Source: Bugula neritina (taxonomy: Eukaryota > Animalia > Bryozoa). Taken from it: 64,000 nucleotides of DNA. Below are positions 16,461 through 62,759 of this stretch, piece after piece (the stretch's first letter is position 1; every line of letters begins with the position of its first letter). The stretch spans positions 26,924,628 to 26,988,627 of the forward strand of contig OZ037767.1 in NCBI GenBank assembly GCA_964035545.1, written 5' to 3'. The position numbers and the translations under genes were made by a program. The notes beneath the pieces were generated by a model. The model searched no databases. It was not told the origin of the DNA and saw only the letters and a list, made by a program, of their open reading frames with translations.

Positions 16461-19400
16461 ATGTTTAGCCTATTACTGGTGGCTTCACTCCTTACAATGC
16501 CCCGTGAATGCCAATTCCAGGGAGATAAGATTCTCACCATTGCTGGCGTACTGTCCTCAGAAAACCACATAGCCATGTTTACCAATATTATTGGTAATCT
16601 CACAGCTCCAACAGGATATAAATATAGGAGTTATGCCATCTCACCAAAAACCAATCCTGTGGCTACGGCCAATGAAATCTGTGACACTGTTATTCCTGAG
16701 AAGGTTTGTATGCATTGCCATAACTGATTGCAATTTGTTGGGATAATTCAAACTGTTTGTTAAATTGCTGCAGATATGCTTTAGCATTTAATTTCTTGTC
16801 ACTTTAAGAAATGAACCGCTTCATTAGTCTATTGACGAAGAAGAAATCAATAAGTATTTATTTTGAGGGTAACTTCAGGAAAATGTGCAACTCAAGTGCA
16901 TCATAGTATATGTAGCCTATTATAATGATATTCATACCATATCTACTTATTAGCAACATGCATTCAAGTTCTGTTGAATCAGATACATATTATAGCTTGT
17001 GCAATAAGTGTGTTCCAGCTAGCCTATTGTGAATGTCGCACAGTAATGAAACCGTGCGAAGAGTACACATTTATGCTAAAGTCATCTCTATTTGAAATAA
17101 TGAAACAATTTCAATAGTCTAAATTCACTTCTATTAGGAATTTAATTTAAGATCTTCCAGTCATATTTTTATGAAAATGTACTGGTGGCTTATGTTGTTA
17201 AAGCTTGTCACTTAAAGAAAAGCTTTTTTAAGTGTCAGTATAAACCTACTTCTTAGTTGCCATCACAGTTGATGCACCCACTCCAGAATAAAACTCACGT
17301 AATTTTATAGTCACCATCCCTGTGAGAAAACCCCGATGGAAAGGGTTTTTGTTAAATCAGGCTAAGGACTTATTCAGATGAGGCCCATGAACAATTATGA
17401 CTGGATTCGCTTTCTAACATCACCAATGTTCTTTGTCGGGGTTCGAACCCATGACTTCGTGCTTACTAGGAAAACGTTCTAAGCCCTAGACCACGGCTGC
17501 TCCCTGCACCCATTCCAGAATGATAACATATAATACAGGCTTATAACATAGGCTACATTCTAAAAACTATTTTTTAAGAAATTTTTTGAGCAAACTAACT
17601 TATATCACAACTTGGTATATGAGCTCAAAGTACATTAATATAAATATATTTAGCATAGACTTCAGTTTTTGCAATTATTGCCTCCTGTATAAAAAATTGA
17701 TTGCATGTCTAATGGCCTCTCATAATATCTAAAAACTCTTGTTAGATGCAAGCAGCTGAACATGTCAAGTGCTTTGAGTTCCTTTTGTTTCTTTAAATTG
17801 TTTCCTTGTAACAAGTGGCCCAACTAACCTTTGATTTGTCTATTACTTCATTAGGCTACTAGGTTTTCCCAGTGCATTGATCCGAGGGTCCACTTCATAG
17901 TAGTATTTGTAATTTACTAAATGGAAGCTAATGCATTGTCATCAGATATTACCAAGTCTTAGTAGTTGAACTTATGTACAATAACCTACAGATCTTTGCT
18001 TTTACTCTTGATGAAAGTGCATGAGTTGAATTATTAAAATGGGGTACAAAGTTAGAATGGAATCTTGTAGCAAATTAAAAATTGTTTTAAAATAGAGACA
18101 GCATAATAATCATAATGATGATGTGTCAGATGGTCTGTAGGCTTTATTAGTGTAACATTTTAGTTATAATATCAATACTAAGTAATATGTTTTCCAGATT
18201 AGATATAAATAATTTAGTCATAAGCTCTAGCATCGGTTAATGAGGACACTGTTTCATTTTCTATTATTACTTACTGTTTATCCAACATTTGTTATTTTTT
18301 TAATTTATGTTGATGGTATAAATGTTATCCATTTGTATTTTGGTGAGTTTGTACTGTTGTAGGTAGTGACTGTGATATACGAAGTCGAACCGGCCAGAGA
18401 TAAGCTCATGTCTTCAGTACCATATATATTTGAGTTCTATAGAATACCTGTAATAGGTGTGTCTTCTAGGAGCAGCATATTCTCTAGCAATGTAAGTTTT
18501 ATAATACTGTGATATGCAATCACCCACCCAATCTCTTTATATATATGCTAAGGCTAGATAGACAAATGTTCAGACTTGCAGTTCTTTGTAATATAGTTAT
18601 GGAGTTACACAAGTGAAGTAACGCAATGGCATGGCTAAAAACAAATTTACATAATTTCTGTGTCTTTAGTATTGCTTAGGTGTGGATATACCAACTTTGA
18701 TAAGGGAAAAAATAAAGATTAATAAAATGGGTATTTTTAAAGGCCAAAACTACAAATAAATCGCTTACTGAATAGGTGACTCAATCAGTGTGTGAATCAA
18801 CTCACTCTCGGTGAGTCTTAGTCACTTTGAGAGTCAATCAGTCTCAGTGAGTGAGTGAATGAGTCAATTTGGGAGTCAGTGAGTCTTTTTCAGTCAGTTT
18901 ATGGGCTAGTGAGTTTTTTGTGTCAGTCATTCAATAGACTTGGGGCTCAGTGATTAGATTAGTTGGTCATGAAAGTCAAATAGTTAGATTTCATAAGTTT
19001 TATGTTAGGATCAAGTTAGTCATGATATAATACTTAGTTCATAGTACTAAAACCTAGTATATTCAAAGTATTTTTAGGTAAAAATAGATTAAGACAGGAC
19101 CTTCGTAAGATTTATACTTGTTAAATGATTTAGCCGTCATAGCCTGGGATAAGTTTGGTAAAAAAAATAAGTTTCTTTTTTAAATTTAAAAACTTTTTTA
19201 CACTTGAGCATGTACAAATATGGGTTCGTTCCAAACTAATTTTTGCTCAGCTTTCTGCTAAATTTGTGAGCAGGGCATGCATGAGAGCCAAGTTGCAGTT
19301 CTCGAATGCTACTAAGTTTTCTCCCCTTGTATCCAGCTTTGTATAAATAAGCAGCCTATACACGGTCTAATTATAATATGGAAAACCATTTGATTACAAT

Positions 19401-22400
19401 GATAGCAGAATATCATTCCGCGTATTCCAACTACAGCGAATAATGAGAAGACGACTCTTCATTGCAAATATTGGTTTTCCTTCCTTTCATTGGATATAAG
19501 ATTTTTTGCTTTGAATGTAGATGCCAGTCATGATAACTTTGAAAGAGTTCGTTTTGAAGTTTATAGTTGATGTTGCTGGATTTTGCTAGCATCGGACTTT
19601 AATTTTATCTGCATCTCCACTTTTCAGTACCAATGAGCTATGTCTATGATTTTTAGATACAGTTTATTCTGTTATTATCAACTGTTATAGGTTTACAATT
19701 ATTCGTGAACTTGTGATGGTTTTTTCATTTAGAAACCAAAGCAGCATTTAATTTTGAAAAAAAACAAGCTGCTAGAATTACTCTACCACGTAGAATTTGA
19801 ATAGAGGAGATGACTTATGCAATTTGTTTTATCTTAGAAATTCCTGTAAATAGTTGTTTAGTTTCCTTAGCCTCATACTTTTACAGTAAGTAAAGGCTAA
19901 AAATTTAAAAAGGTCTTAATGGCTTTGGTTTATGTTACTATATATATTGAAGTTTGAAACTATATAAGTCAACAAATTAAATAAATTGTAATGCTGAACT
20001 TTTTATATTAACTTGACTTCTATAATTAAATATGATGCAGTATACATAATATAACCATGCACATTATACATAAAACATACATTTTCATAGTATATGCAGA
20101 AAGTTATAGTATGACATCCAAATATGGTTTCGGCTGAAAAACTTACATGATTTGAAATTACATATGCATTTTATTAAAAATCATTTTGATAGTTTAGCCA
20201 TCGTTGAAGATCTGAAATATCTAATTGATAATGATCAATGATTATTTGGGGTTGAAACTCGGACAACTTTTTAAAAAAATATTTTCTGACAACACTTTTA
20301 GCAAAAATGTTCTAATATAAATTATATAATATAATATTATGAATATCATGTCAAAAATTATAACTGTTGCATGTATATGGGGTTTGAGGTTCAATGTTCT
20401 GCGTGCATGTGTAATTGAGTCAGGTAGTGTTGGATTTTTTATGCAATAATAAAGAATATACCTAAACCTTGTCCTCCATGATGGTAAGTTAAAGTAAGTC
20501 AAGGTACGTTGTGTATAGGCATCTTCCTCGAAGCCAAGCTTTTTGTGGACTGGTTTAATAGATATTTACGTCTTCCGCTATCAACTAATGAGTTCTTTAC
20601 CTGTAGAATGTTCGTAAAAGTTTACTAAAATTACCAGAACTTGTTGAAAATTAAGTGAAGCTTAGAATTAATTAGTTGAGCATTTTAGATCAGATCTGTG
20701 GTTTTAGCAAATTAGTTGGATTCAGGTATCCGTGTTATATTTAGTATTTTTTTCATTTTTAAAATTGATATAAAGCCCCATAAAGTTTCTTTAATGCTGT
20801 AGTAATTGCATAAATTTTAAATTTTTTTCATCACTCTGATTATGATAGATTTCCTCAAGGAATGGCAGGTACTAACAAATAGTTTTAGTGTGATCACACG
20901 TTCAATGTTATGCTATGTACTAAACCTGTCTCTAGTGTAGTTGTGCTTCATGCATATATTGCACAATACAAGGTATTTTTCCCACTACATTGTAGGTATA
21001 GTTGCATAATACAAGCACTCCACTGACTTTATTTGTACATTTTATCATTAAAAGATTTCTTACCATAGAGTCTTGTATCAGACATCTCATAGTGATCAGC
21101 AACACCTACAATAATATACACCACAGCCTGTAATACAGCTTACAATTATATACAATATATAATAGTATAATATAATTTGAAAATGAATGCTTGTATAACA
21201 CAGTTAGGCCTATTGCTCTAGATAAATCATAAAGTTTATACATATTAGCAGTTCAGGTATAAACCAGGAATTTCAAGAAGTAAACATTTAGCCTTACCTG
21301 TAAACTAATCGCACCAATTACAACGTATTCATACAGCAAATCATATCTGTGGAACAGCAAACCAACATAAACAAGAACAGCATATCCCGGGAATATTAGC
21401 AGATAGCTATCCAGACTGCTATATCTGAAATCGACCAGAAGATGTTTATGTTGTAGTGACCCATCTTTTGTTTGAAAGTAGAATGTGCTTATTCAAAATC
21501 ATCATCTTCTATATTATATCTTTTAAAATACCCTAAACTTGACTCTTGTGCAACACTAACTATATTTACAAGTGTAGGTATTGTAGCAATTGGAATTATA
21601 TTGCTCTATTCTCAGTAAACTTCTCAATTGCTAAAACTAATTGAAAAGTCTAGAATTCTGCCCTTACATTGAAGATTTAGCTTTGGATTGCAAATATTTT
21701 TTTAAAAATTTATTTTTTATAATTGGCTTATCTCCTAAGGTAGTTATAAAAACATGAATGTAGTATAAAATTAAATTCTTGTAGAATATATTATAACAAT
21801 AATATATAACTTTATTATATTAATGTTATATATTATAATTCTATTCTGTAAGCATAGGATTTGCACCATAAGTTGACTATAGCCTGCCTCAATGGTTGCT
21901 CTACTTACTTTATGTAGTCTTTCTGTGTATCTGTCAGTTTGTTAGATTTCCATATAGCACCAATGTTTGTACACACTAGGACTGTCACATGTACCTATCA
22001 TCAACACCATAATAGTATTTATATTATAAATAATAAGTGCTACAAATAGTCCCATTACAGGTAATAATTAATGTGTATTACATGTATCACATGCATGTAG
22101 TTGTTATAAGGTAAATATAGGCCATGACCGATGATGATTTGTATTTAGATTTGTCTACTCATGTAATAGTAGCAATAACATCTGGCAAGCAGCCTATTCA
22201 ATAATTACATCATTACTAAACACTAAAAACAGTGCCATGCAAAAAGTAATAGTTCTAACACTTATAATAATGTATTGCATGCTGTCAGTTTGTAAAACAG
22301 CTAGATGATGAGAAGACAACTGACAAAACACAATGCCTTATTATGACCTCACTTCAAGGTCATTTACTGTAACTGTTCAGGTTTTTTAATAAAATCTAGA

Positions 22401-25400
22401 TCCTACTAACCAGTACACTCTGTTTTATGCCTGCCATATACAATATAGCTAATCTTCCAACAACAGTATTTATTTAAAAAATGAAACCAAGTAAAATACT
22501 AGTAGAGAAAACAAAACAGTTGCAGTATTTTAAACTTATTTTCATTTGGTTTAGTTCACATTTATAATGTAGTTGCTTTGCGTCCTGAATATTAGTGTGA
22601 TTATGATGATTTATTGTACTCACTACGAATATAGAAGAAACTGGTAACAGCTGGAGAAGGAATCCCAATTGTGTGTCGCTTTTAAACCAGCACCTACATT
22701 ACATATATCAACAATTAAACTGTATTTTAATTTGGTATATGCTGTGACATTAGGCTTACATATACTGTTTGTTTCATTTCAATCATCTTTTGTGACAGTT
22801 ATGGTATGGGAGATTCATTCATATTATTATGAACTTTGTTCAGTATCAGTATTAAGATAATGGTGTATCATACAGGTATGCATTATAATTATTTAAGATA
22901 CATCATGACTCATATCTGTTTAATTTTAAATGCTAGAAAATAATTTGTAATGTAATTTAAGCTGTACATTGTTCAACTCACTCTTCAACATCAAGGATGA
23001 CTTCATGATCTGTAATATAATCACTGGAGATGAAAATTGAAACCAGTGTTAGTGGCAAACCTAAAACAGAATTTAAGTAGGTGAGATTTTTCATTAACGT
23101 ATAACTCATTATGTTTTAGTAAAGCCAGTTCTACTGCAAATGAAAATTATGCTACAACCAGAAATCAAATAAATTGCACAAAAAGCTTTACTAAAAACAT
23201 TTTAGTTACTTTTATTTTGTTATTTTATGTCATTTTTAGTTACAGAAATTTAAAGTCTCATCAAACCACAGATTCTCAATAAACTAAATAGTTTTGAATA
23301 GCAAATTTCGAGTCATCTATCACTACAAATTGCTAAGCAATTACAGCTCTTGTTCTTACTTATAATATAGTGTATAGTTTTCTATTTTATTATGACATGG
23401 GCTCTGCATTTTTAATATGAAAACTTATTTTAAGTGTTAGTCTCAGTCTTCAGCTGTTTCAAACTGAGATTTGTTGCTTACAGATTACATATTGAACGAA
23501 ACTTTAGCTGACATAATCACGTTGTACATACCCCATGCTGTAGTATAGTAAATGCATCTTTTGAAGTCCTTCTGGTATAAAACTTGAATGCTGAGAGAAA
23601 CCGTACTGGTTGCCAACCATGTGACTGTAACAATCAGGGCAAACAGTAGGAAGCCCACGTTAACCACACATTCCTGTGAAAATTATATATATACTTCTAT
23701 AGCTGTTATTACCTTTGTTTGGCATTATATCCAACCAATGGTCAAATGATCTAAGTTGTAGATAGATGGTAAATGTCAGAAATAAGTTTACTTGTTAGCT
23801 AAAAAATTATGACTATTCAAGTAGAAAATAGATATTAAGCTCTAAATTTTATCAATAGTAGTTATCATTTTTGTTGTCATAATACATTTGAGATCCTTAA
23901 ATTTGTAATACTATAAGTAATTTCAAGGCTATTATTTTTAATTTTAGACTATGAAGGGGAAGGAATTAATACTTTAAAAGTGTTCAGTGCTAAATTTATT
24001 TATAATATTTAATTTTAATTTAATTGTGGCTCTTTTAGCTTATACCTACAGCTTTGATTTTATTAAATATTCAACACTACACTCTTTGTAATAAATTTTA
24101 CTGCAGAACTTTTAGTCCTATTAGCCATTTTCAAACTGACAAATATGCTTTTGTAGTATGTACACAAATATTATGTTGGAATCAACACATCTCAAAGTTT
24201 AAAATATAAATTGTCAGATTATTTACTAAATTGTTGTAATATACAAACTACAGCTCGTCCAAAAGCTACTATATATTGATGATGCTGAGAATTTTTAACA
24301 TCCAAGGATATTGAAAATGAATAAGATTTGTTTATAATGAAATATCTAATTTGTATATATAATTTATATAGTAATATTGTACATCTAGTTTGTGTAGTAA
24401 TATTGTACATCTAGTTTGTGTAGTAATATTGTACACCTAGTTTGTGTAGTAATATTGTAATGCCAACCTGTATGTTGAGATATTGTTCTTTCATAGTGAT
24501 GAGAGTAACACATAGTAGAATATATGACAGAGTAGTTTGCATGGATATTTCTATTCGAACTTTCAAATATTCTTCTATCGATTTTTCTTTTCTGACGTTA
24601 ACACTAAAACAACATGCATATCTTACTTTAACGTAGCTATACTACACTGCATGTATAACTGTTCCCTATATAAAATTGAGAGTTATGGACACCTAGTTAT
24701 ATGGAGCATTTATTTAATTTATGTTGTAATTAAATATAACTTTCGCACCCTCTGATTTTTAAATTTTTCACAGTATTTGTGCAAAATTATATATTCCTAT
24801 TCGAATCTTAGACAAATTAGCTGCCTATATTTTAAATGCATTAGTTAATGGCAAAGGCAATAATGAGGGATCAAAGAGCTAAATATAGTCCATTTAATCA
24901 TCATTATAATTTTTTGTTTGCTTATTATTGGAATGAAAGTTCAATGCTGAACAAACAACACCAACTTTTAACATATGTACAAATTTTAGCTCAATCAATA
25001 TATTGATATAATTTTCCTTTTTTGACAAATGTTGGTTCTTTAGTTTTTTGCTTGATGTATTTATAGTTGCATTTTTCATCGATTCCCTGCGGTATGTGCA
25101 CTTCAGCCTAATTTTATTAGCATTTAAGTGACATTTTATTTAGGATAATTGATGGAATGGCTGTGCATGGTTTTTTAGTCTTCATATAATAAATTAATCC
25201 ATTATTATAACATAAGTATTTTAAAAGGGGCATAATAAAATTATCAAGTCAAAAAGTTAATATTGATTTGGTGGTTCTATTAGATGTTTGTAGCTTTAAG
25301 ATTTTTTTTCCAAGTAAAGCATTAAACCAAACAATAGAAAAACAAGATATATATAAAGCTTCACATTTCAATGCCTGCTATACACGATATATTTTCTAGT

Positions 25401-28400
25401 CATACGATATATTTTCTAGTCATACGATATATTTTCTAGTCATATACGATATATTATTTTCTAGTCACACGACTTTACATTCTTTAGTTTATTTGATACA
25501 CAAAACCCGCTAATACATCGTTAGTTTTATTATATAATTTTTTGTAAAGTTTTTTTTTATGTATCTGTGTATAAAGAAATCAGTAGCAATAGCCAGCATT
25601 ATTTTGGTAATATTGAGGCAAAGTTGTTATATTTGGTAGCTAAACTTACTTACAGATACTAAAGGTCTATAGAAGTATATACTGTACTATAAGCACTTAC
25701 TATGCATATATCAGTAGCACTAGTAGTATAACAAGCAGAGCAGCACATGTAGCTAGCAGTGTTAAACTCATGTCATCTATTGGTCCTCTCCTTGTCCATG
25801 TGTGCTAAATGACAAATTACAATGCGGACAGTATAGTAAAGTTTGAACAAGCAACATTACATAAATGCAGTGATAACTCAAATATAGTATTCTGTCAAAA
25901 TGTCAGTAAAATGAGTTAAGTCACTTCAATGTATAAATACAACCAAAAAACAATTGTTCTTTAGTGCCGATCAGAGTTTGGGTTTTGATGTGTAGTTTTG
26001 TCTTGAATACGACCTACCATAAACTAAGAATTGCTCTATGTACTATATAGATATTAGCGAAAGTCTCATTAGTTCCTATTGAACTAGGCTCATTGTAATT
26101 TTTTTTAACCTATTTACTTTCACTGCATTAGCCCAATATCCCATTTCAATTAACATTGTAGAAATTTTGATTTATCAAGTTTTTTAATAAAGGTTACTAA
26201 TTTAAAAAGTTTTTGCTTACCACATAATCGGCAGTGTAGTAGTAGTTTCCCATAAGCTCAGACATATTGGTCACATTGGTAACCCCTTCAGCTAGCCTAC
26301 CTCTCCAACATGGCTTATACCTGCCTTATTGATCACCTCTTCTTAATGACTTTGCATTTAGCTGCTGACAATCTATGTTTGAACGCGTTAAACACACATT
26401 TAATAGCTTTGATCTCAGCTTATTTGCTACGTTGATTTTATTGATTTTTATTAAATTTTATTTATTCTGTTTCAATATAAAATACTGTTTCAAATACTAT
26501 AAAAAGTGATACAGGTGCTCATTGAAGTCAACCACACGTTTTTGTGATGTATTCTTGTTTACATAACATATTGGAAATTATTAGAAATTTAGCAGAGCTG
26601 TGATAAATATTTTATAGAACTTTATATCGTATTTAAAGAGATTAGAAGCTACTCTAAAAAAAGTGTTCTCCCCTATTACGTGCCAGCTAACATGTAGGCC
26701 GTAGCTTTAACAATAACTATAACAAATGTTGCTCTTTTTTCACTAAAGTAATAAGTTTTTGCTTGAAGTAGCTTTGACTATTGGTCGTAATGTAAAAAAA
26801 TAATTTTTGAGATCAAGGTAAAACATGGGGTTTAAAATTAGAGAATGATTTTGTGATTTAGTTAGTGTAGGCTACAATCATCTTCAGTCACCAATCAAAT
26901 TACCTATTGTAAACTTGGTGATGTTGAGAAAACTTTTTCTTAATCTTTCAAAATTATGATTAATTTAATATTAATAGTAAATGCTTTTTGTTGCAAATGC
27001 TGAATATTTTAGTTTGAGAAAGTAGTGAGGACAATAAAAGCTCTTTCTGTTCTAGGTATTAGTCATATTGTACACTGAAACAAACCTAAAGCATTACCAG
27101 AAACGGGCAATAATTTGGGAGCAAATATATTTTTTAGGTTTGATATTCAATAATTTTTTAGAAGCATGTTATTTGCAGTTCATTTACACTATTGGTGAAT
27201 TGTAAACTGCATTTTTCTTAGATGCTAGTTTAGCTTTAGCCTAGCTTTGTTATAAGCCTACAAATAAGCAATACTTTTGAATTGTACAAGCTGATATAAT
27301 CTATTCGTTGATATTTTAGTATTCACATCCGTTTTTGCTGCGGACCTTGCCACCCTATTCTTTCGAGTCCATTCTATGGTTCAGAACATTGCAAGACTTT
27401 CAGTATAGAAGTGTAATATTCATCTACACTAATAACATCGAAGGGGAGACAACTTTAAACAACTTTAGGAGTGCTATATTTCAGAGTCATAAAGCGTATG
27501 GACAAAAAAGCTTAGAGGTGAAAACAATATATCATGTCGTACTACTTTGTACGTGATTAAATGTAAGTGGCATAGTGGTGGATGTATGTTTGATATATGT
27601 GCTATTGGGGGGGGGGGGGGGGGGCAAGTAAGACTTGCCTTGGCTAAGTAACACATATTTTTGTAGATTACTGAGTTGATTTTGCTGCAGCCTTATAAGA
27701 AAAACTTCACAGATGAACTACAATCTATACTTGGTAAAGACACAAGAGTTATCCTATTATCTGCCAGGTTCGCAATCTTGTCTTATACACAGTACTTGCA
27801 GACATTGAAATGGTTACTTTTGTCAGTGTACTTTATAGTACGGTCTATAATCTATATTTATAGTCAATGTTTTTGTTTTAATAATAGATAGTTTTGTATC
27901 TTTTATGTATTTTCAAACCCTGTTTTGTATTCATACTTAATTGAACTGTTTGGGGCACAGAAGTTGTGCCATTAGTTTGACTCAATAAATATTCGGATAG
28001 CTTGCTCTGGGGGGGGGGGGATTTTCATCTTGCATTTTTTCTGTATTATAATTGGCCTACCCCATCTAGCAAAACACTATCTATCAAATTCTGATTAATT
28101 GTTGTGATAACATCACAATTTTGACCATCTTTAGCCACTTTAGGTTTTTGTATATTCAAAGCCTTATAAATTCTAATCAATGTTAGGTTCTGTTGGCTAT
28201 AAAATTATTGTCCAAAAACATCATTTGTTGTTCCCTAGTACATTAACAACAACACTGTTGATCATGGAAATAATCTTCTAGCACTTTCACTTTAGGGCAA
28301 TACCTTTACCTTGAGGCAATTTAATGAGTCTCAAAATATAAAGAGTTTTACATAGTAATTAATGGACCTTTCAAACCCACAACATCTAACTTTATGTTGT

Positions 28401-31400
28401 GTGCTCACCACAGGCTCATATGACTGACTGCATAAATGCTAGGAACTAATTATTATATATTCTACTTCAGTTCAGACATAGCGAGTCGTGTGTATAGAGC
28501 TGCACAGCACTTGGGACTGTTTGATGACAGTTGGGTGTGGCTAGTAAGCGAGGAAGCCCTGGTTGCCGGGCAAACACCTCAAGGTAACCTGAACAACAAA
28601 AACAATAGTCATGTTTGCTTCATGGCAACCTGTAATATGCACCAAAGAATATTATTACACTGATTGCCATAAAAAACGTCCGTAAAGGTAATTTATTGAA
28701 TATTTTTCTTATCACCAAAAAAGCATAATTTGCAAAAGTCAACAATATGTTTCCTACCATCAAATTTTAAAAAACCAGTATTTTTTAAGAAAGTGAAGTT
28801 TCTTTAAAATAATTTTGTTATTTCATAGACAATTAGCGTTGAAAAAACAAAAGTAACTTTCTGATACAAAGTGAAAACTGTTTTATAAAAATGGGTTAAG
28901 TTGCTGTTTTAGCCAAAATTATTATAGCTACTCTTGGTGTTCACATTATACATTGCATTTTTTATATTTCTATTGTATATATATGTTGCTTTTTTAGGAA
29001 CTCTAAGCTGGAAAATTTCTAAGCTCGCAAGTGACACACAGTCGAATCTCAAAGATGCCATTGCTGTAGTTGACAAGGGTCTGCACAACTATTTATCTTC
29101 CGGCAATTCTTTAGATTTTAAGAATTTGCCGTCTTTCTGCAGCGCCACTATTCCGGAACATCCCGACATCTTCTGGTCATCTGGTGTGTCACAATGGCTT
29201 CCCGGTGAAGACCTTTATGGGTATGATATATTTTATATATTATATTATATTATATTATATTATATTATGTTTTATATAATATATATTATATTTTATATAC
29301 TACATCAGATTATGTTTGATATGTTATATTTTTTGTAATATAATATCCTGTATTATACTATATATCTCATTTTATTAATTATATGTTATATCAATTTATA
29401 TTATATAGCATTATATTTTATATTATATTATATTTTATTATGATATATTTTATATATGATATTATATTTTATTGTGTGATATATTATATAGTACATATTT
29501 GATATATTATATTATGTATATTTTATATTATATACATTTTATATTTAAACTCATTATAATAGCATACTCATTAATACATTATATCTAGATAACATAATGT
29601 TGTGCATTTCTGACTAATGAATACTTGTAGATTATATAAAGACACGGAAATAACTGGTGACACGGGTTATGTCAGCTTCAATAAAGAAGGCAGCAGGCTA
29701 TGTGTTAACTATGACCTAGTAAACATTGCCACAAACGCTTCAGAGGTGGTGGTTGGCAGCTATACCTGCTCTTACAATGCGAGTGCAAGTGACGTAGAGC
29801 GGAATTTATCCATAGCTGATAGTGAGATAGTTTGGCCTGGAAAGTCAACAATTAAACCTGCCGGAGTAAAATTCTCCAAACACCTCCGAGTGGTTACGAT
29901 ACAAGAGACTCCTTTTGTCTATGCGGAGAAGCTGAAGCCAGGCGACGAATGCAACTCTACTCAGTTGAATGATATGACGAATAATGCCAGTATGAAGTGT
30001 CCTAAATATGTAGACAATGGTGAGCTTTTGCATCTCTGCAAATATGCATTTTAGCCTTTTAGTTTCCCTTATTTAGCTACTAAATACGATGTCCCATAAA
30101 GAGTAGTTTCACACTACAGTAACCTTAACTCTACTTTGACAATATAATATTACATTTTTATTGAATATATTATATTGTATGTATTATTTTAGATTTATTA
30201 TACATATTATTATATATTATTATATGTATTATTTGACATATTACATATTCATTATGCATATTATTATACATATTATATGTTTATTATTATAGATATTATT
30301 ATATATCTTATTATATATTTACAAATAAAATACATCAATATCGTTTTATTGAACACAAGATACTAAAAGTGTTGAATAGACTATTAAATTCTTTTTTCTT
30401 ACAATCCTTCATGCATAATTCAATGCAATATAGTTCTAGTGTTTATCTCTCTATTTGATTTCTCATATGTATCTTAAACCTCATTCTACAAGAGTTTGTC
30501 TATATCATGTTTTCTCATTCAACAGGTACAGTGTTAGAATTCTGTTGCCATGGTTACTTGATTGACATGTTAGATATGCTTAGAATAAACATGTCAGTGA
30601 CTTTCTCACTTCATCTGGTGGCTGACGGCAGTTATGGTGCACTACTGCAGGTATATTCTTACTTTAGTTACATAAGGCTATACTGTCGCATACTGTACAA
30701 CTTTGTGATCTTACATAGAGTTATTTTTATTACAATATGTAGATGAGTTACATAAATGTTATAGATATATAAGCATATAATATAGATAATATAGATATAT
30801 AATATAGATATATAAGTGTATAATGTGCTCACAGCATTGTAAAATATTATACGCATGTTCTCTAGCCTAGTATGCTTGTCATACGTTACTAAACTGTTTG
30901 ACTATATGTCGAGTGCAGTGTGTGTTTATTTAACTATCACGCATTACACTGCATATTGCATGCCATTTATTACATTGTAACACCTTTTTAATCAATACTG
31001 AGTATACGATGCTTGGTACAATAATTCACCCGTATGTGTACACGCGCGCATGTGTTTACAGCTCTATACATGTATATACACAGTATAATACAGTTCTATG
31101 AATATATATACACAGTATAATACAGATCTATACATGTATATACACAGTATAATACAATTCTACAGATGTATATACACAGTATAATACAGTTCTATACATA
31201 AACGCAGGTATCCAACTCATCCTCCAAGTCCGAATGGAATGGTATGATGGGGGAACTGCTCTCTGGAAAGGCTGACATGATTGTTGCACCACTGACTATC
31301 GACCCGGAGAGGGCAGAATATGTTGACTTCACAAAACCTTTCAAATTTCTTGGCACAACTATCCTCATAAAAGAAGTACAAGTTTACTATTTTAAATCAT

Positions 31401-34400
31401 TTCGGCTTAGTTTGTGTATGAAGATATCACTGAAGCTTGCGTGGAACTGATTCTGTTTTGTAAATTATTCCAGAACACTAAAGTCTCCAGCTTGGGCTCC
31501 TTCCTTCAACCTTTCCAGAGTACGCTGTGGTTCTTAGTGGTTGTCTCTGTTCATGTCATAGCCTTAGTTCTCTACTTACTTGACAGGTAAGTTTTTTCAG
31601 ATAAGAGTGAGAGCCCATAAAGTGTTTCCTGCTCACTTTTGATTATATATTTGCCACCCAGGCTTGTAGTTCTTCAAATGCAGAGTTATCCAGACTATAT
31701 GTTGATACTGTAGGATTGTTTTTAGGTCATAATTCAAGGATTGCAAGTTTTTGTTTATACTGTCTGTAATATTTCAGTCTAAATTAACCAAAATGATGTG
31801 TGTGAGACTTCATGTGGTAGTTATGTATTGATATCTATCCATAATATATACTTATCATATGTAATTTTCTAATTAACAAATTGTAATTTTGAATTTAATT
31901 TGCCATATTTTTGTTAGAAGTTTTTCAATAACGTGAATTTAGTTTAGATAATGTTATTCCTAATTTCAAAATGCTTTCTTGTTTAAACTTTTTTTATATT
32001 TTATAAGCCTGGATCAAGCAATAGGGAGCATTGATCTGGTAGTTTGGGTTAACTTCTAAGATTTAATGAAACTTTTGTAGCCTCAGATCTATAGTATTTT
32101 GTGATAACATTTTATACTTTTTGGTTTGCTTTACTAAGTAGTACTTGCATATAAGATGCGAAAACTTTAGTTCTTATAAATTACTTTTCAGTAGGTAGTT
32201 AGTGTAGCCGAGAGCAGTTATATTAGGATTCCATTGTAGGTTTAGTCCTTTCGGACAGTTGCAATTAGCCCGAGTTACAGACTCTGAAGACTCTCTCAGT
32301 CTATCTACAGCTGTCTGGTTTGCATGGGGAGTTTTGCTCAACAGTGGAATTGGTGAAGGCATGTATTCTATACTTTATTGTGGAGAAGCACACCAAGTTG
32401 TCAATGAGAAAATCTACTTTAATCCATCTGCTGCACCATAACATAGTTTGTCATCTTTTTAAGGAACTCCAAAGAGTTTTAGCGCTCGAGTCCTCGGGAT
32501 GGTATGGGCTGGCTTTGCAATGATCATAGTGGCGTCATATACTGCTAATTTAGCTGCTTTCCTTGTGCTCGATAAACCTGAGGCTACGATATCTGGCATT
32601 GATGACCCAAGGGTTAGTCTGGCTTATGAATAGAACACTGTAGAAACTCTAGAATTCTTCATTTGTGGTTTGAACTTTTATAACCTGGAAAGATTTACTC
32701 GCATTATGTTGTTATAGTTTTATGTACTTTAGCTGAGAAATCCAACAGAGAATTTCAAGTTTGCGACAGTGAAACACAGTGCCATTGAGCTCTATTTTAA
32801 ACGACAGGTAGAATTCACCACTATGTATAGGACAATGCAGAATGATAACAAAGACACTGTAGAAGAAGCTATAGCTGCTGTTGAGAATGGGTAAACACAA
32901 TGTATACAACAGATGTTCATGTGTATAATACTGTCTGAATATAAGAATATCTAAAGATTGATTGTACCCACAATAACTAGTGTGGGTAAATCACTACAGT
33001 AAAGAATCCAAAGTTTATCATACAGCATAAAGTAAAATTTTACTAACTTGAATATTGTAACTGACTATTGGTTTAAATGCTCAATTCACAATTTTCAGGT
33101 CAAAATTAGATTCAGGTTAGTAGTTGAGAAAGCAACTCCTACTTGAAATATGAATACTTCTTCCTGTTACATATGTCTTGAAACAATATTCTCACACTGT
33201 TAACCTGTTGTCTAGCTGTTGTGTTGATTATTATTGTTTAATAGAGACCTGCATGCGTTCATCTGGGACTCCCCACGTCTGCGATATGAAGCTACAAAGA
33301 GTTGTGACCTCGTAACTGCCGGAGATTTGTTTGGTAGGTCAAGCTATGGCATTGCCTTCAAGAAGAACAGTCACTGGACTGAGAGGTTTTCACATAAGAT
33401 ATTGTCTTACCATGAAGGTATGCTGTTACTTCATAACACTTACTCTACTCGTGTTAGTAAATCTGTGTAACAATTGTCTGTACAGTTTTCTCATCCACTA
33501 GCAGTGGATATAAATTATTGTTGTTTGGAGTTGTCTATACCCACAACAGATTGTATTATGTAGTTTCCCTTTGTAAGTTTTTAAAAATACTGCTCATGTG
33601 ATAAACTAATTTTATTTTTAATTTGTATAAATAATGGAATAGAAATTGTTGTTAAAAATCATGAAGACTGGTTTATTTTGGAGTTGTCTTTCATATATTA
33701 AGTCCATTGCTAATATGAAAACATCTTTGCCCGGTTTGGTGTAAAACAGGGATATTTAGCATTTAGAATCTCTTTCAGATTCTGTATATTCTGAAAGACA
33801 GCTTGGCAAGTATTAAGTGAGATATATATGAAATGCAGCACACTGTATGCCATAGCTTATACATTGTATATTAGCTAACATTTTTCATATATACTTTAAA
33901 ATCAACTGACACAATTTCCAAATTTGTTTGTATGATCTAGACTGTAAAGATAAAGTTCCAATGACTATAACACAAATATTTACCAGGTTTTATCATTACA
34001 ATAAACAATAATTCGTTTGCGTTCCTAATTTCCGTGGTCATGCTTTTTCATTGTGTAAGCAGACAACTCTTAAAAATTGTTTTGCTTTGTAGTTATATGG
34101 TTATAGTCGTTGTAGCTTAACTATGATGAGCACTACTTTGTTTTACTATCCATCTCACACATACTGACCATGATAACACATTAATACATACTCAATTCTG
34201 CCTGCTAGTACAAAGTAGATAGTAATTGAATGAGTGCAGTGAAGTCACTGCGATTAGTATATAGTCAAGACTATACAGAATACAGCTGAATGCAAAAGTA
34301 AACTGCATTTAGATTATATTCAACATTTTTGAAGTTAGTTTAACTTTTTTCTACTTCACCTGACCTATTTTGGACAAAATTAGTGTTGGCTAAAGCATAT

Positions 34401-37400
34401 TGTAGATAAATTCCCTTTCCTCCACTATTCTCACTTTTAACTTTTGGACTGGGGTGTGGATTTGAAGTGTGCTTGTCTTAATTAAAAAATACAATTTTTT
34501 AGTTTATAAATTTTATAAATTACGCACACTTTTGGTATTAGCAAGTCTTTATCTAGTCACCTTTTGCTATAAGCTGCCAAAGGCAAGGAAATGTGATGTT
34601 ATGAGTTTAATTTTATTTTACAACACTTTTTAGTCGGTAAAATGGAAAGGTATGACACAAAGTGGATACTAAACTCATCTGCAGCTGCTAACTGTGATGA
34701 TGGAAGTACATCTCCAGCTACCTTAGGTCTAAAGAACATGGCCGGTACCTTGACGTTATTTCAACAACTATATTGAAAACTTGGAATCTAATATCTAATT
34801 AATATATTGGTTGGATTGCATAGTAAATGTAGCTGTTCTAAATCACAGTAGAATAATAATTAGTGATAGTCCTACTTAACTGGAGATCATTCTTGAAAAA
34901 TACAGTTTAATTTTATGATCTTTCAGCTTTATAATTTACATTTGAACACTTGCTGAATGACTGTCATGTAATGAGAGTATTTCTTGTAGTGTCTCCATAT
35001 TGTAGGAGTGTTTATCATGGTGGCTGTGGGCATTGGTGTTGGATTCATTATGCTAATGACTGAAATACTGTACAGTAAATATCAGGGCGAGAAAGAAAAA
35101 CAAAATGATATTGCAAAGAAAGCAGTGGCCAGATGGAAAAGATACGTTCAGGTAGATGCTCGTAATCTATTTTTGGGTGAAGTTATGTTAATAAAATTGT
35201 GTTTATATGGTATGTTTATATGTAAAGAAAAGATGAAAAATATGATACAAGGAATAGTATTGTGAAATAAATCTTTTACATCAGCTTGTAATTATGCGTG
35301 ATAGTTATGAAGTCAAAGGGAATAAAAAATGAAACTAAGGGAATTATTGCTTACTTTCACATGTTACAAGTGTTAAATTGATAGCAGCAGTTCAACTTAA
35401 ACTATTAAATCCTAATAGAAAGCATAAATTGAGAATCATTTTTGTATAATCTATTAAAAGTTGTCTTCTTTTCTTTAGTTGTATTAATCATTTTTAATTT
35501 GCTTATAGAGGAGAAGAGCTTTGCGGAAAACCTGGGCACTGATAAAAGACATAAACGATAGTGAAGTCATCACTGAGAACGAGGTATGCGGTACTCATAT
35601 CACATTGATGCATAATTTATTTATACCATCATATACCCATGTCATTTTTTTAATTAGTTTTATATAATCTGCTTAAGCATTGCTTAAAAGCAATTAGATT
35701 ATAAAATCCTGAACTCTTCAAATGCCAAAATCATTTACAAATTTTATACTTTGTATTATTTCAAAATTGTTTTAAAATATAGAAAATAAAAAAAGGTTGA
35801 ATTTGGATTAGGAATTTTGCTTGTAGTAAAATGGTCTAATTTTTTACATAGAACCTTTGTTGCTGAATATTTTTGACACTGTGAGGATTTTAATGACAGT
35901 AAAAAGCTATGTATCATATCCTTATGTTTAACTTTTTTATTATTTTTTTTCAAGATTTGTATAATTGCTGTACATACTCACTGCTTGCTTTCCATCTAAT
36001 ACTGCTGCATGCATACACTCTAACCTGCTCTAATCTCTGCTTATGCTAACAAATACAATGCATACTGTTGTCATTCTGCACATTAAATACTACATTTAGG
36101 AATACAGCACACAGCATATGGTATGTAGTATATGGGCCTTTGAATTCTAATGTTAACTCACCCAAAGTGTTACTAATAATACACATAACCTGAACTAGAT
36201 GCATGGGCAGGTCTGTTTCCCCCACAAAGGTTACAAACTAAAAGTTCTGCATTTGTAAATTTTATCCAACTAGTTCTGTGCTGGAACTATACTATGTGCC
36301 AATGGAATTATAAATTATTTCAGAATTTTTTTCTTTAACAACCATTCTCCTAAGTGCATGTATGGTGTTGCAACCCAAATACACGGTAAAAGTTTTAGCT
36401 CAACCAAATAATTGCAATGTTGTTGAACAACATTGGTTGTCTATTAAATTTTAGAGTCACCCATTTTACTCCCTCCCCTCCCTTTGTACAGCCTGTGTGA
36501 TGCTTGGTGATATTGTGAAGATAATTCTAAAACTCCTAGACATATATTATAATATGAAATATACTCAGTTAAGAGATGTGTGTGTCAAATTAAACAAATG
36601 TTGTGTTTACATCAAATTCTGGTTTAGATTTGAGTGCAAATTTGAAAAAAAAGATTTTCGTACCCTCTGCATTAACGGAAATTTTATAAAATATTAAATA
36701 TAATTTTTGATACACTGCGTTAAACATACTATACTACACTTTACTGTACTATATATACTCTAATATACTGCACCATATTTCATTGCACTGCACTATATTG
36801 TATTAGGTACTGTATTGTACGACACTGTACTGTACTATATAATACATATACTTTAATTTACTTATGGTATGCTATAATGCTACACTGCACTATCTTATAC
36901 TTCATTGTACTGTACCATATTGTACTATACCATACTGTATGGTATTTCAATTTCAATCACTGTGCTGCACTATGCTATACGTTGTTTACTTATAATATGT
37001 TACACCGCATGCACTATATTATACTTCACTGTACTGTATTGCACCATACATCACTATTCTATACTATACTACATGGTATCTGGATCACATGTTACAGAGA
37101 CAGCGAATAAGAGCATATCTAGAAGGATCGTCTTGCAAGACAAAGTCTATGTCACCATCACAGAGCAGACTCAGCCCGGCAGCTCTCACCCCTTCCAAGC
37201 TGGCATCTATGACTCAGAAAACAAGTAAAAATGGAGATTTGTCTCCCGCCAGTCATGAGTAAGCAATTCCTTGTTAATGTGTTAATCTTGTCTAACTACA
37301 TTATATCAATGTACATACTTTTTACATATAATATATAAATAGCTGATCTTGGTAGAAGAATCATGTTTTTGAAAGGTATGACAACTCCTAAATGCTCTAT

Positions 37401-38201
37401 CTAATTTTATTATCTCTTAGTCCACAATTGCATATAATAATTGACATTCTTCAAATTTAAATATGGGTGACATTGTTGTATTGTTGAGACATAAATACTA
37501 ATAGCAACAGTCCCTGTAGTTTCCTCAACTCTTCAATGCATCATCTCAATATTTTCGTCAATGTAGCACACATAACAAGTATTTTACTTTTAAATGTAGT
37601 TCAATATTTTTATATCCAGTCTTACAATGTATTCAAGCCAAGCTGTTGAACATTCTCTCATGCCATAAAACTATTCCAATTACAGTTTAGATACGAACAA
37701 TAGTTATTTGATACTATGAGTTCTTTTCTTTGAGAATATTTGGGGCTAATTATTCATATTTAATGAATACTTACAGTATGAATAACCTATGTGTGCTAAC
37801 AGATATCCTAAACTACATTTTTATGACTTTGTTGGTCATGCAGCAATCAGTACCAATTAGAAAATATGTTTAAATTATTTTAAATTCCAATACCCACTAT
37901 GCTGCAATTTGTTGGTGACATGCAGGTAAAATGGATAGGGCTCTACTAAATCCATAGAAAAACCTTTCATGAGTCAATATTATCGAAAGAACTGATGATC
38001 ATTACATATATTTTGCTTGAACTGTACCACACATGACAAATGATTTCTTTTTGTACAAACTATGTATTTTACAGAGATCTAAGGGAATTTCCAAGACACG
38101 AAGTCGTGGATATGCCAGCAAGAACTACAAGTGTCTTACCACCGAACTTTTATAATGATGAAACAGTAAAACATAATCCAATATACAGTGAGACTGATTA
38201 G
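16461..38201 (+). CDS. GRIN1: NMDA-type ionotropic glutamate receptor subunit 1 (GluN1/NR1-like), ~1006 aa, 19 coding exons
   Basis: Exons 16461-16703, 18363-18491, 27320-27517, 27667-27767, 28471-28583, 28998-29220, 29631-30019, 30526-30650, 31208-31375, 31474-31586, 32240-32358, 32464-32612, 32733-32890, 33245-33417, 34634-34744, 35006-35151, 35509-35583, 37098-37258, 38075-38201 join in frame (3021 nt). GluN1 signatures: [63 protein letters not shown] (N-site Asn), [61 protein letters not shown]. The last two tail exons are less certain. Confidence 0.95.
17290..17504 (-). mobile_element. tRNA-derived SINE, full length with target-site duplication
   Basis: The minus strand begins GGGAGCAGCCGTGGTCTAGGGC (A-box-like) and has a B box GGTTCGAACCC, then the core CATTGGTGATGTTAGAAAGCGAATCCAGTCATAATTG. 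Flanked by the 17-bp direct repeat TGCACCCA(C/T)TCCAGAAT at 17273-17289 and 17505-17521. Confidence 0.85.
20499..26265 (-). CDS. Divergent class B (adhesion/secretin-type) 7TM receptor, ~310 aa, nested antisense in GluN1 coding intron 2
   Basis: Exons 26265-26221, 25804-25701, 24603-24468, 23673-23532, 23060-22982, 22693-22624, 21994-21909, 21424-21298, 21105-21064, 20600-20499. All are GT-AG and phase-compatible, giving a 933-nt ORF with no internal stop. It has seven hydrophobic segments, a TM3 Cys (EC), a TM3 Trp, TM4 YYTTAWGLP, ECL2 CW, a TM5 Pro and TM7 SLQ. The first and last exons are less certain. Confidence 0.85.
24371..24458. repeat. 26-bp tandem repeat (GTAATATTGTACATCTAGTTTGTGTA x~3.4)
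   Basis: Directly visible, immediately adjacent to the donor of a nested-GPCR exon. Confidence 0.85.
25383..25470. repeat. 20-bp tandem repeat (TACGATATATTTTCTAGTCA x~4)
   Basis: Directly visible. Confidence 0.85.
31065..31199. repeat. 32-bp tandem repeat (TATACACAGTATAATACAGTTCTATACATGTA x~4) abutting a GluN1 acceptor
   Basis: Directly visible and ends just before the CAG at 31205-31207. Confidence 0.85.
36100..36120 (+). other. Candidate 21-nt frame-preserving microexon (EYSTQHM) in the GluN1 cytoplasmic tail
   Basis: TTTAG|GAATACAGCACACAGCATATG|GTATGT in a phase-0 intron. Upstream cluster of CTAAC/CTAAT and TGC motifs, with flanking TGCATG elements. Confidence 0.55.
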
Positions 38202-39110
38202 CCTCGCTGCATGACGATGTTATCAATATTGGTAGCTATACATTACCCTTACATTTGAATAGGCTATAGCTAAAAGATAAGACACGTTTCTGGATTACAT
38301 TCTACATTGCATGGTCTAGCATGATTGAATTTTTTTTTTACACTCATCATCTTATTTTTAAGAAAATATTCGTTTTAATAGAGTTTATTCATTTTATTGC
38401 AAAGTTTATTATAGTAGCTCTATACAATTTTGTACAAAAATGCACAATGTACTGTTAAGAATGGCTTTGCTAAATACAAAGAGACAAAAAAATACAGCAA
38501 TATGAAGAATTCATTGAGCCATGGTACAGCCTAGTGTAGCGTTGGATTCCAGCCTAGTTGCCGTATATGCACAAGTGCTACAGATTGCTTCACACTTGGA
38601 ATAACTACTCAACAAAGAGGACATCTCAGTTGAATGGTTATGTATAACAACACTTGAAATAATAAAAACAACGAGAAATGTAAATTGTGCACTAAAAATA
38701 ATATTTTTAAGTTCTCCAACTACTATCTAACACCATTACTGAAAACAAAAAAGTAGTAGCCAATAGACCACTATATCTTGATAGCAACAGAAACAACTCA
38801 ATTTTAAGAGGAAAAGTGCGAGACCAAGGAATCTGCTGACCCTGAGCCAATTCACTGATATTTCAGAGATTTGAGCACTCAGAGTCGGCAGCATCTAGAA
38901 CCAGTAGCACCTGGCAGCGCCTGGTAGTATTGGCATTTCCTGTTGGCTAGAGCAACAGCCACACAGACTGAAACCATGGCAATGAATCTCATCAATATAT
39001 ACTCTTAAATATAAACAAAGTGGAACCAGTGAACCAGCATCCTGTCTGCGCTAGCATCAGTTCCAAGACAGTATCACCAGCGTGCTAATCACGGTTACTG
39101 TGCCACTGCG

Positions 39111-45659: not shown

Positions 45660-46004
45660 CACATCTGTTGAGCAACTTACATTGAAAACAAAATTAGATT
45701 CAAGACCGAAAAGAGCAGATCGACATAAAATTATTGCTGTGATGAAATGCGAGGTTACTTTCTCAACACATCCATTTTACTCGTTGTAACTATTTTGCTG
45801 TGAGTGTAACTGGTACTGTGGATTACTGAAACTCTGAATTTGGGAATTGACCTTGACCTTGGAAATAATTGTAGTCAACTTAGAGATTCTCGTCTCCAAA
45901 TATCCGTTTCCGCTGACGACTACACAACAGTTGGACAACTGTCAGTGTCATTCATTGCCGACGAAGCACACCGCTCACTAATAAACTCTTGTTATATTAA
46001 AAAT
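45660..46004. promoter_or_regulatory. Probable bidirectional promoter CNOT2 (-) / SSR3 (+)
   Basis: Minus-strand donors GTGAGT (45662) and GTAAGT (45680) mark a first CNOT2 exon about 320 bp from the SSR3 ATG. CpG-containing patch within AT-rich DNA. Confidence 0.55.
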
Positions 46005-58720: not shown

Positions 58721-59357
58721 ATTTGATTATTTTATATTGGCTAGATTATTTCTACAAAGTAACTTGTTTCCATGTGCAACATTCCACTTTACATTCCACT
58801 TATTTTATAATTGCTATTGCCAACGAATTTTATACTTCTCTAGAATCACCTTCAAGCAAATCTACTATTAATATATCTCTAATCTAATACATTCCATTTG
58901 TACATAAACATTTACTGTTTGCTGCCTGCATATATACTATTATGTTGATGGTAAATAACGTTTAATAAAGATTTTGATATCTTATGGAAGATATGCATTT
59001 CTCTTTTTCCCCGGAGTTATTGAATATGTGAAGATTGGTGCATAGAAATCACCTAATACAGCTATTTGAATGTTTATTTTTGATTAATTTGAAAGATTGC
59101 TGAAAAATCGTGAATAAAATATGTAGTATATAGCAAAATAAGAATAAAATAAATGTAGTATAACTGGTGTTGGATGATCATAATATACAAGTTTATGAAT
59201 TTTGGTCATGAAACATTAGCACACTTCCAGGGAACTTTAATTAAAATAGCATGGCTGAGGATGGTGAGTTTAAAGTAGCCACGTCTGCATAGTAAAAGCT
59301 TGTGCAGTTGGCCTCAAAAGGATGTAATCACGTGACAAGTGATGAAAATGTCTTCAT

Positions 59358-62300: not shown

Positions 62301-62703
62301 AGACGAAATAATAACTTGACTAAAATTGAAATCAAAATTCTAAATACAAAATTTACACCATTATCACAGGAAAAACTATGTTAAAAATACCAGAGAAGGC
62401 TACAATCAACTTGAGCGAATAGCAAACACTCACAAGTACTGGCCACCTGAGTCAAGGAGTAACATGTTGTTCTTATTCACTGCATTGTTGGTGGCCTCCG
62501 TGGCAGAATAATGTATGTATGCACCGTTCTTACCAGACCCTGCTATGGTATTGAAACTCAGCCCTCTATTTCCAACCTGTTCCCTGCAATTCATATAATA
62601 ATATGCTTCTTGTATGTGCATCTTTAATGGTTTCAGCTTAAATGCTGCATTGCTTTTTAAGTCAGTTAGATATATTAGTTGACCACTATAATTTTAAAAG
62701 CTG

Positions 62704-62759
<56 letters not shown>

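What the first reader, a model, noticed from the sequence alone, without database searches (positions are those of the whole stretch)
20499..26265. Hidden ectodomain-less adhesion/secretin-type GPCR nested antisense inside the NMDA receptor gene
Seen: the 8.8-kb GluN1 intron (18492-27319), by far its largest, contains ten minus-strand exons that splice with consistent phases into ~310 aa: [310 protein letters not shown]. Established: the TM3-Cys/ECL2-CW disulfide pair, TM4 WG-x-P and TM7 SLQ(G) are class B 7TM hallmarks, and introns within WG, before CW, in mid-TM5 and after LQ recall adhesion-GPCR gene structure. Seen: no signal peptide, GAIN/GPS motif or hormone-binding domain, and several class B residues (TM2 His, TM5 Asn, TM7 Gly) are replaced. 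Inference: a truncated, fast-evolving orphan receptor, possibly part of a lineage-specific (e.g. chemosensory) expansion, whose transcription may be coupled to or interfere with NMDA receptor expression.
Basis: partly seen in the sequence, partly recalled or inferred. Interest (0 to 1): 0.9.

Follow-up and report, generated by a model that had tools for sequence, protein, structure and literature searches.

The report
Headless GPCR inside NMDA-receptor intron
A bryozoan carries an intact, unannotated seven-helix receptor gene of the adhesion/secretin class backwards inside an intron of its NMDA-receptor gene; it seems to have lost the large outer domain that such receptors use to catch ligands, a state known from vertebrate ADGRA1, and nothing here shows a functional link to the host gene.

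Summary
Ten minus-strand exons (26265-20499) with nine GT-AG introns give 310 aa with seven hydrophobic segments, inside GluN1 intron 2 (18492-27319) of Bugula neritina chromosome 3. A sister lineage keeps all 18 splice sites, has no indel in exons 1-9, and gives dN/dS 0.22 (p 4e-7), so this is a constrained gene. It is a very divergent class B receptor: its exons match class B paralogues in order (rank 3 of 40320) and it keeps all nine class B intron sites seen in this genome. Adhesion or secretin origin is unresolved; TM3-TM5 sequence leans adhesion, gene structure leans secretin, and neither family's defining ectodomain was found. No upstream HRM, GPS or signal-peptide exon was found, but a moderate acceptor lies 31 nt before the ATG, so 'headless' is about 75% likely. 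The activation-lock residues are replaced. The gene is single-copy (no expansion found). Two gastropod GluN1 genes show no such nested gene. I obtained no RNA evidence, and coupling to GluN1 is unsupported. The scan had not noted this gene before; it noted other nested 7TM genes in this genome.

The parts
26221..26265 (-). Exon 1: start codon and 15 aa; codons 3-5 vary between lineages, codons 6-15 invariant; phase-0 donor
25701..25804 (-). Exon 2 (104 nt, phase 0 to 2): short stalk and TM1
24468..24603 (-). Exon 3 (136 nt, 2 to 0): ICL1, TM2 with H2.50 replaced by E68, ECL1
23532..23673 (-). Exon 4 (142 nt, 0 to 1): C97, TM3 with W114 kept and E3.50 replaced by S118, ICL2, W142; best class B match (z 6-6.7 to ADGRD-like paralogues)
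22982..23060 (-). Exon 5 (79 nt, 1 to 2): TM4 with G143 and P145, acidic ECL2
22624..22693 (-). Exon 6 (70 nt, 2 to 0): C170-W171 and first half of TM5, intron six residues after P186
21909..21994 (-). Exon 7 (86 nt, 0 to 2): second half of TM5 (N5.50 replaced by H194) and ICL3
21298..21424 (-). Exon 8 (127 nt, 2 to 0): TM6 without PxxG, ECL3, TM7 up to Q263
21064..21105 (-). Exon 9 (42 nt, 0 to 0): the 14-aa TM7 exon; G7.50 replaced by V264
   Evidence: PMC3659299
20499..20600 (-). Exon 10: 33-aa basic tail and stop; no PDZ-type end; last residues differ between lineages
20170..20175 (-). Candidate poly(A) signal about 320 nt after the stop; a matching signal lies at the same distance in L002
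26266..26311 (-). 5' region: conserved 4-codon upstream ORF (26311-26297), a moderate splice acceptor (first base 26296, score 4.6-4.9) and a donor-like site after 26301
18492..27319 (+). Host intron: GluN1 intron 2, phase 0, 8828 nt; the same site has an intron in Aplysia (2.8 kb) and Bulinus (about 90 nt)
16461..38198 (+). Host gene GluN1 (GRIN1); the end coordinate is the last aligned residue of the NCBI protein

Best explanation
A single-copy, constrained, very divergent class B GPCR gene that lost its ectodomain and now starts about 28 residues before TM1. It reached GluN1 intron 2 by a DNA-level move, not by retrotransposition, since it keeps nine ancestral introns (inferred). The protein probably inserts with TM1 as signal anchor and keeps the TM3-ECL2 disulfide (inferred from sequence). 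Without GAIN/Stachel or a hormone-binding domain it cannot use tethered-agonist or two-domain peptide activation. It most likely works like ADGRA1: basal G-protein signalling, helped by loss of the HETx ground-state lock, tuned by a small or short cationic ligand at an open, acidic outer pocket (inferred). The nesting is most likely incidental. Shown: gene, constraint, class B architecture, residue losses. Not shown: expression, 5' end, signalling, ligand.
For: Gene and constraint; a third haplotype has exons 1-7 open. Class B: collinear exon order rank 3 of 40320; profiles built without the gene give combined z 5.4 (adhesion) and 3.0 (secretin-type); nine intron sites and phases. Headless: no HRM or GPS hit near the locus; no constrained upstream minus-strand exon with ectodomain features in 26266-39700; the frame upstream of the ATG is broken in L002 and has stops beyond 14 codons in L043. 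Lock: H2.50, E3.50 and the aromatic 7.57 are replaced; HETx mutations cause constitutive activity in class B1 (PMC10166269). ADGRA1 lacks GAIN and activates G proteins without known ligand (PMC13178472). ECL2 has 7 acidic residues against 1 basic.
Against: No Pfam 7tm_2, PDB or Atlas hit for single exons. Exons 7-9, the G-protein-coupling half, score near zero against class B profiles, and PxxG, N5.50 and G7.50 are gone, so coupling may be lost. A moderate acceptor 31 nt upstream of the ATG is frame-compatible in two of three haplotypes. The HETx rule comes from vertebrate B1 receptors and may not transfer.
Confidence: 0.45

Rival explanations
1. Exon 1 is an internal exon: an unrecognised, degenerate ectodomain is encoded upstream and splices in at 26296 (or directly to exon 2), making this an ordinary though divergent adhesion or secretin-type receptor.
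For: Acceptor at 26296 scores 4.6-4.9, inside the lower range of 47 paralogue and GluN1 acceptors; window and L043 are frame-compatible there and both carry an N-x-S/T sequon. In the secretin-type paralogues the exon before TM1 is the last ectodomain exon.
Against: L002 has a 1-nt deletion in that stretch with the rest of the gene intact; the stretch changes like unconstrained sequence (5 replacements and an indel in 16 codons, none in the next 20); no HRM, GPS, signal-peptide or constrained exon was found up to 39700.
Confidence: 0.2
2. A non-signalling (atypical) 7TM protein kept as a dimer partner, chaperone, ligand scavenger or scaffold for another receptor.
For: TM5b-TM7 motifs needed for class B activation are replaced and these exons are the least recognisable, while the disulfide and TM3-TM4 core are kept and the gene is under purifying selection.
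Against: The tail and inner loops are basic and constrained (tail dN/dS 0.09 on few sites); the ADGRA-like paralogue here also lacks E3.50, and vertebrate ADGRA1 signals (PMC13178472).
Confidence: 0.2
3. A chemosensory receptor from a lineage-specific expansion (for example for larval settlement cues).
For: Short N-terminus, no ectodomain, extreme divergence, no relative among 1.84 billion representative proteins other than the sister-lineage exon.
Against: Exon searches of the own genome found no paralogue and a mixed TM3 profile found only recognisable class B genes; dN/dS 0.22 shows no sign of diversification. Very distant paralogues could be missed.
Confidence: 0.07
4. The main role is regulatory: convergent transcription of the nested gene tunes GluN1 expression, or both are co-expressed as a neuronal module.
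For: Antisense nesting can affect host genes in other animals (abstract of PMC12274878); the 5' flank is well conserved (96% at 26500-26401 against 91% in introns).
Against: No expression data. Two gastropod GluN1 loci show no such gene. Nested GPCRs were noted in unrelated host genes of this genome (unchecked notes s1-457255, s1-447168), so nesting alone is ordinary.
Confidence: 0.05
5. A pseudogene or a chance chain of exon-like pieces.
For: Not annotated in NCBI GCA_010799875.2; no transcript shown; the exon 2 acceptor scores low.
Against: dN/dS 0.22 (p 4e-7), no indel in exons 1-9, all splice sites kept, open in three haplotypes as far as covered.
Confidence: 0.03

Closest known systems
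ADGRA1 (GPR123), the one vertebrate adhesion GPCR without GAIN (PMC13178472)
   Same: Class B 7TM with a very short N-terminus, no adhesion domains, no GAIN or tethered agonist; ligand unknown.
   Different: Not an orthologue: the ADGRA-like gene of this genome (C1:4.92 Mb) shares only two intron sites and scores combined z 1.0. ADGRA1 has a 268-aa tail with a PDZ motif; this protein has about 40 aa and none.
ADGRD/latrophilin-like adhesion GPCRs (paralogues at C2:20.5 Mb, C1:20.1 Mb, C1:9.9 Mb)
   Same: Best sequence matches for TM3-TM4 (z 5.5-6.7) and, for one, TM6-TM7 (z 4.6); share five or six intron sites including the last one.
   Different: They have GPS and Stachel and keep H2.50, E3.50, N5.50, G7.50; this gene has none of these.
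Class B1 secretin-family receptors (five paralogues with HRM; vertebrate CRF1, PTH1R, calcitonin receptors)
   Same: Four of five paralogues share eight of nine intron sites with identical phases; the 14-aa TM7 exon matches the conserved secretin-family exon (PMC3659299); TM2 best matches the C4:6.84 Mb paralogue (z 5.5); exon 2 is 104 nt like the TM1 exon of the C1:10.2 Mb paralogue.
   Different: No hormone-binding domain, no HETx, no PxxG, no TM4 tryptophan seven residues after the proline; weaker total similarity than to adhesion receptors.
GHRH receptor splice variant SV1 (PMC8501799)
   Same: A class B1 receptor with an altered N-terminus whose signalling shifts as a result.
   Different: SV1 is a splice form of a normal gene with an intact 7TM; here the change is fixed in the gene and the 7TM motifs are eroded.
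Methuselah-like receptors (many in this genome; a Ciona member lacks the ectodomain, PMC2396169)
   Same: Divergent class B-like 7TM, often with H2.50 or E3.50 replaced; some single-exon similarity (exon 6, z up to 7).
   Different: Their 7TM is intronless or nearly so here, most have long Cys-rich ectodomains, and the group profile scores only z 1.4.

Membership tests
Class B 7TM (adhesion + secretin) | Seven TM segments with GPCR topology | tested here: met
   Seven KD19 peaks 1.5-3.1, positive-inside loops
Class B 7TM (adhesion + secretin) | TM3-ECL2 cysteine pair, TM3 Trp and TM4 Pro (over 95% conserved, PMC8584163) | tested here: met
   C97, C170-W171, W114, P145
Class B 7TM (adhesion + secretin) | G7.50 (96% conserved) | tested here: not met
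   V264 after Q263
Class B 7TM (adhesion + secretin) | Pfam 7tm_2 match | tested here: inconclusive
   No hit exon by exon; exons are 23-47 aa; the joined model was not searched
Class B 7TM (adhesion + secretin) | Collinear similarity and shared intron sites with class B genes | tested here: met
   Rank 3 of 40320; all nine sites occur in paralogues
Class B 7TM (adhesion + secretin) | Class B fold of the whole protein | not tested
   Needs the joined model, which was left out
Adhesion GPCR | GAIN domain with GPS | tested here: not met
   No PF01825 hit near the locus, no GPS-like upstream exon
Adhesion GPCR | Stachel consensus (T/S-x-F-x-x-L-M, from memory and paralogues) before TM1 | tested here: not met
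   N-terminal length fits a cleaved fragment, the residues do not
Adhesion GPCR | TM3, TM4 and TM7 signature motifs of PMC8584163 | tested here: inconclusive
   TM3 2 of 5, TM4 2 of 3, TM7 1 of 3 positions kept; profile z 5.4
Class B1 (secretin family) | Signal peptide and hormone-binding ectodomain | tested here: not met
   No PF02793 hit near the locus; N-terminus not hydrophobic
Class B1 (secretin family) | HETx motif and TM6 PxxG (PMC10166269) | tested here: not met
   E68, S118, no aromatic at 7.57, P233-G234 adjacent
Class B1 (secretin family) | Gene structure including the 14-aa TM7 exon | tested here: met
   these sites also occur piecemeal in adhesion genes, so they do not prove membership
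Class B1 (secretin family) | Placement inside the B1 clade on a tree | not tested
   Needs the joined model
Class B1 (secretin family) | Activation by a peptide hormone | not testable with these tools
   Bench assay
ADGRA (GPR123/124/125) | Similarity and gene structure of the ADGRA-like paralogue; long PDZ tail | tested here: not met
Methuselah-like | Cys-rich ectodomain and intron-poor 7TM | tested here: not met
Opposite-strand nested gene | Whole gene inside one host intron | tested here: met
   20499-26265 within 18492-27319
Opposite-strand nested gene | Nesting conserved in distant animals | tested here: not met
   Aplysia and Bulinus only; other bryozoan genera not available

The most novel reading that the evidence does not exclude
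A secretin-family (B1) receptor that lost its hormone-binding domain at gene level, keeping only a nine-residue trace of the domain's last strand in exon 1, shed the activation lock to become a ligand-independent signaller, and is co-expressed with GluN1 from inside its intron. The trace has the spacing seen in the C1:10.2 Mb paralogue (0.5% of shuffles, chosen after the fact).
Probability: 0.12. Interest if true: 0.75.

Novelty: new variant of a known kind. Interest (0 to 1): 0.45.

Why it matters
Class B receptors are defined by their ectodomains; among the 33 mammalian adhesion GPCRs only ADGRA1 lacks one, and how it is activated is open (PMC13178472). An independent, constrained, natural loss in a bryozoan, with the lock residues also gone, would give a second test case for how a class B 7TM works alone. 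It also shows that such genes escape Pfam-based and NCBI annotation, so receptor counts in bryozoans are low estimates. The nesting in GluN1 adds little until expression data link the two genes.

Tried and rejected
The run finder listed no run on record as RNA. Joined model: joined only inside scripts for translation, hydropathy and dN/dS; it was not searched, folded or put on a tree, and all searches went exon by exon by reference. Blank or uninformative: Pfam by exon (6), PDB by exon (27, 28), ESM Atlas (26, 89; scores 0.82, noise level), two metagenome scans, the bacterial promoter scan (95, not applicable), contig look-ups for Lineus, Pomacea, Mercenaria, Littorina and Potamilus GluN1 (78, 81-83, 85). 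The A4 profile hits in PDB (94) are circular because A4 holds class B paralogues; not used as evidence. Rejected: the divergent adhesion paralogue at C3:31.86 Mb as parent (similar TM4 start, different introns, combined z 2.1); ADGRA orthology; exon 1 as a Stachel; weak HRM hits on C7, C1, C3, C4 as relatives (several are sushi-like exons); a candidate upstream exon 28196-28061 (many replacements between haplotypes, wrong phase for the 26296 acceptor). My first claim that the upstream frame is broken was weakened by the third haplotype. The GluN1 dN/dS included intron bases and was corrected to 0.17. Exon 8-10 rows for L043 are forced placements outside the fetched flank and were ignored. No human contig was fetched.
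Full report
Setting. The window is C3:26924628-26988627 of a 216.0-Mb assembly in 321 contigs. The host intron 18492-27319 is real: phase 0, GT-AG, 8828 nt, the next largest being 1659 nt.

Observation. The ten exons splice as described into 310 aa; all nine introns are GT-AG. Donor scores are 3.4-9.8 and eight of nine acceptors score 5.5-9.1 on a matrix trained on 47 paralogue and GluN1 exons; the exon 2 acceptor scores -1.0. A JGI contig (L002, about 87% identical overall) holds the orthologue with all 18 splice dinucleotides, no indel in exons 1-9 against 62 gap openings in 4518 intron bases, and dN/dS 0.225 (dN 0.031, dS 0.138, Fisher p 4e-7). Substitutions fall 11/10/30 on codon positions 1/2/3. 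GluN1 exons 1-3 give 0.17. A third haplotype (NCBI GCA_010799875.2, L043) has exons 1-7 open; exons 8-10 lie outside the fetched flank. NCBI calls no gene there and starts its GRIN1 model at exon 3. A poly(A) signal about 320 nt after the stop has a counterpart in L002.

What it is. The protein has seven hydrophobic segments, basic inner loops and acidic outer ones, and no signal peptide. Single exons hit nothing in Pfam, PDB or the ESM Atlas, and an exhaustive HMMER search with exon 4 found only the sister-lineage fragment. I therefore compared each exon alone with class B paralogues fetched from the same genome. Against seven paralogues cut into eight matching pieces, the collinear order ranks 3 of 40320. 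Profiles built without the gene give combined z 5.4 for adhesion receptors (ten random sets of five: 2.6-6.1), 3.0 for five secretin-type receptors and 1.4 for Methuselah-like ones; the signal comes from exons 2-6, while exons 7-9 score near zero. These z values come from shuffles of short hydrophobic peptides and are rough.

Gene structure. The nine introns sit before TM1 (phase 0), after TM1 (2), before the TM3 cysteine (0), inside the TM4 Trp-Gly pair (1), before the ECL2 cysteine (2), six residues after the TM5 proline (0), at the end of ICL3 (2), after the TM7 glutamine (0) and 14 codons later (0). Four of five secretin-type paralogues have the first eight. Adhesion paralogues have subsets: CELSR-like seven, latrophilin six, two ADGRD-like five, ADGRA-like two; the BAI-like gene has at least five. 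The 14-aa TM7 exon is a conserved feature of vertebrate secretin-family genes (PMC3659299). Because secretin receptors probably descend from adhesion receptors (PMC8584163) and every site also occurs in some adhesion gene, the pattern proves class B ancestry and a DNA-level origin of this copy, but not the subfamily. Sequence leans adhesion, structure leans secretin; I leave it open and file it in neither family, since GAIN and HRM were both tested and not found.

Is it headless? Genome-wide HRM and GPS scans give no hit near the locus. No constrained minus-strand exon with cysteine/tryptophan motifs or a signal peptide was found between 26266 and 39700 in window-versus-L043 and window-versus-L002 alignments. 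The ATG at 26265 is the only in-frame start shared by three haplotypes; codons 3-5 vary and codons 6-25 have no replacement (few sites). The caveat is an acceptor 31 nt upstream (score 4.6-4.9) that is frame-compatible in the window and L043 but not in L002. It could serve a 5' UTR intron or an unrecognised upstream exon. I put headless at about 0.75.

How it most likely works. Kept: C97, C170-W171, W114, W142, G143, P145, Q263. Replaced: H2.50 (E68), E3.50 (S118), N5.50 (H194), PxxG, G7.50 (V264) and the aromatic 7.57 (numbering by intron-anchored alignment). In class B1 the HETx motif holds the inactive state and its mutation gives constitutive activity (PMC10166269). ADGRA1 lacks GAIN and activates G proteins without a known ligand (PMC13178472). 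The best inference is a basally active receptor tuned by a small or short cationic ligand, given the acidic ECL2 (0.45 overall). Main rivals: a hidden ectodomain (0.2) and a non-signalling partner protein (0.2), the latter because the coupling half is the most eroded.

Expansion and nesting. Exon searches of the genome return only this locus (one E 2.3 hit), and a mixed TM3 profile returns mainly loci already seen as class B or GPS hits. These searches can miss distant copies, but no expansion is visible. The host intron site is old: Aplysia has 2.8 kb there and Bulinus about 90 nt, neither with a called gene or with exons of the class B pattern, whereas the same scanner finds exons 4 and 6 in the window. 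So nesting is absent in two gastropods; other bryozoan genera could not be checked. Unchecked scan notes report other nested GPCRs in this genome. Nothing here links the gene's transcription to GluN1.

Limits. The joined model was not searched, folded or placed on a tree; searches went exon by exon by reference. No RNA, 5' end or function was observed.

Verdict. A real, unannotated, single-copy, probably headless and very divergent class B receptor gene: a new variant of a known kind, interest 0.45.

Noticed in passing
L043:1407-6336 (NCBI GCA_010799875.2, VXIV02002113.1): Intron 5 of the nested gene is 4930 nt in this haplotype against 288 and 275 nt in the others: a 4.65-kb insertion with inverted repeats and no long ORF.
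   Followed up: partly
window 16461-18491; protein P0004 (KAF6027281.1): The NCBI GRIN1 model lacks exons 1-2 (signal peptide and start of the amino-terminal domain), probably because the long intron split the prediction.
   Followed up: yes
window 26311-26297 (minus): A four-codon upstream ORF in good start context, 46 nt before the main ATG, kept in all three haplotypes; could damp translation.
   Followed up: partly
window 26500-26330 (minus): Well-conserved, indel-poor block with a repeated 9-mer upstream of exon 1; candidate promoter or 5' UTR.
   Followed up: no
L022 (C3:31.86 Mb) beside L007 (C3:31.88 Mb): Tandem adhesion GPCR pair; the L022 copy keeps GPS but has lost H2.50 and E3.50 and has a degenerate TM7, a parallel case of lock erosion.
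   Followed up: partly
C2:6.30-6.39 Mb, C5:8.78-8.83 Mb, C7:8.5-8.7 Mb; L014-L020: Clusters of Methuselah-like class B genes with intronless 7TM and long Cys-rich ectodomains, about seven copies on C2; this is the real class B expansion in the genome.
   Followed up: partly
window 17287-17504 and L043/L041 near GluN1 3' introns: A 218-nt repeat in GluN1 intron 1 of the window matches an element inserted in a later GluN1 intron of the NCBI haplotype (84%); probably a mobile element.
   Followed up: no
window about 9900-12600 (+), 39500-42200 (-), 46000-48500 (+), 59300-64000 (-): Neighbours read as PEX2-like, NOT2/3/5-family, TRAP-gamma and Xaa-Pro aminopeptidase genes; NOT2/3/5 and TRAP-gamma are confirmed by Pfam labels, the others are from recall.
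   Followed up: partly
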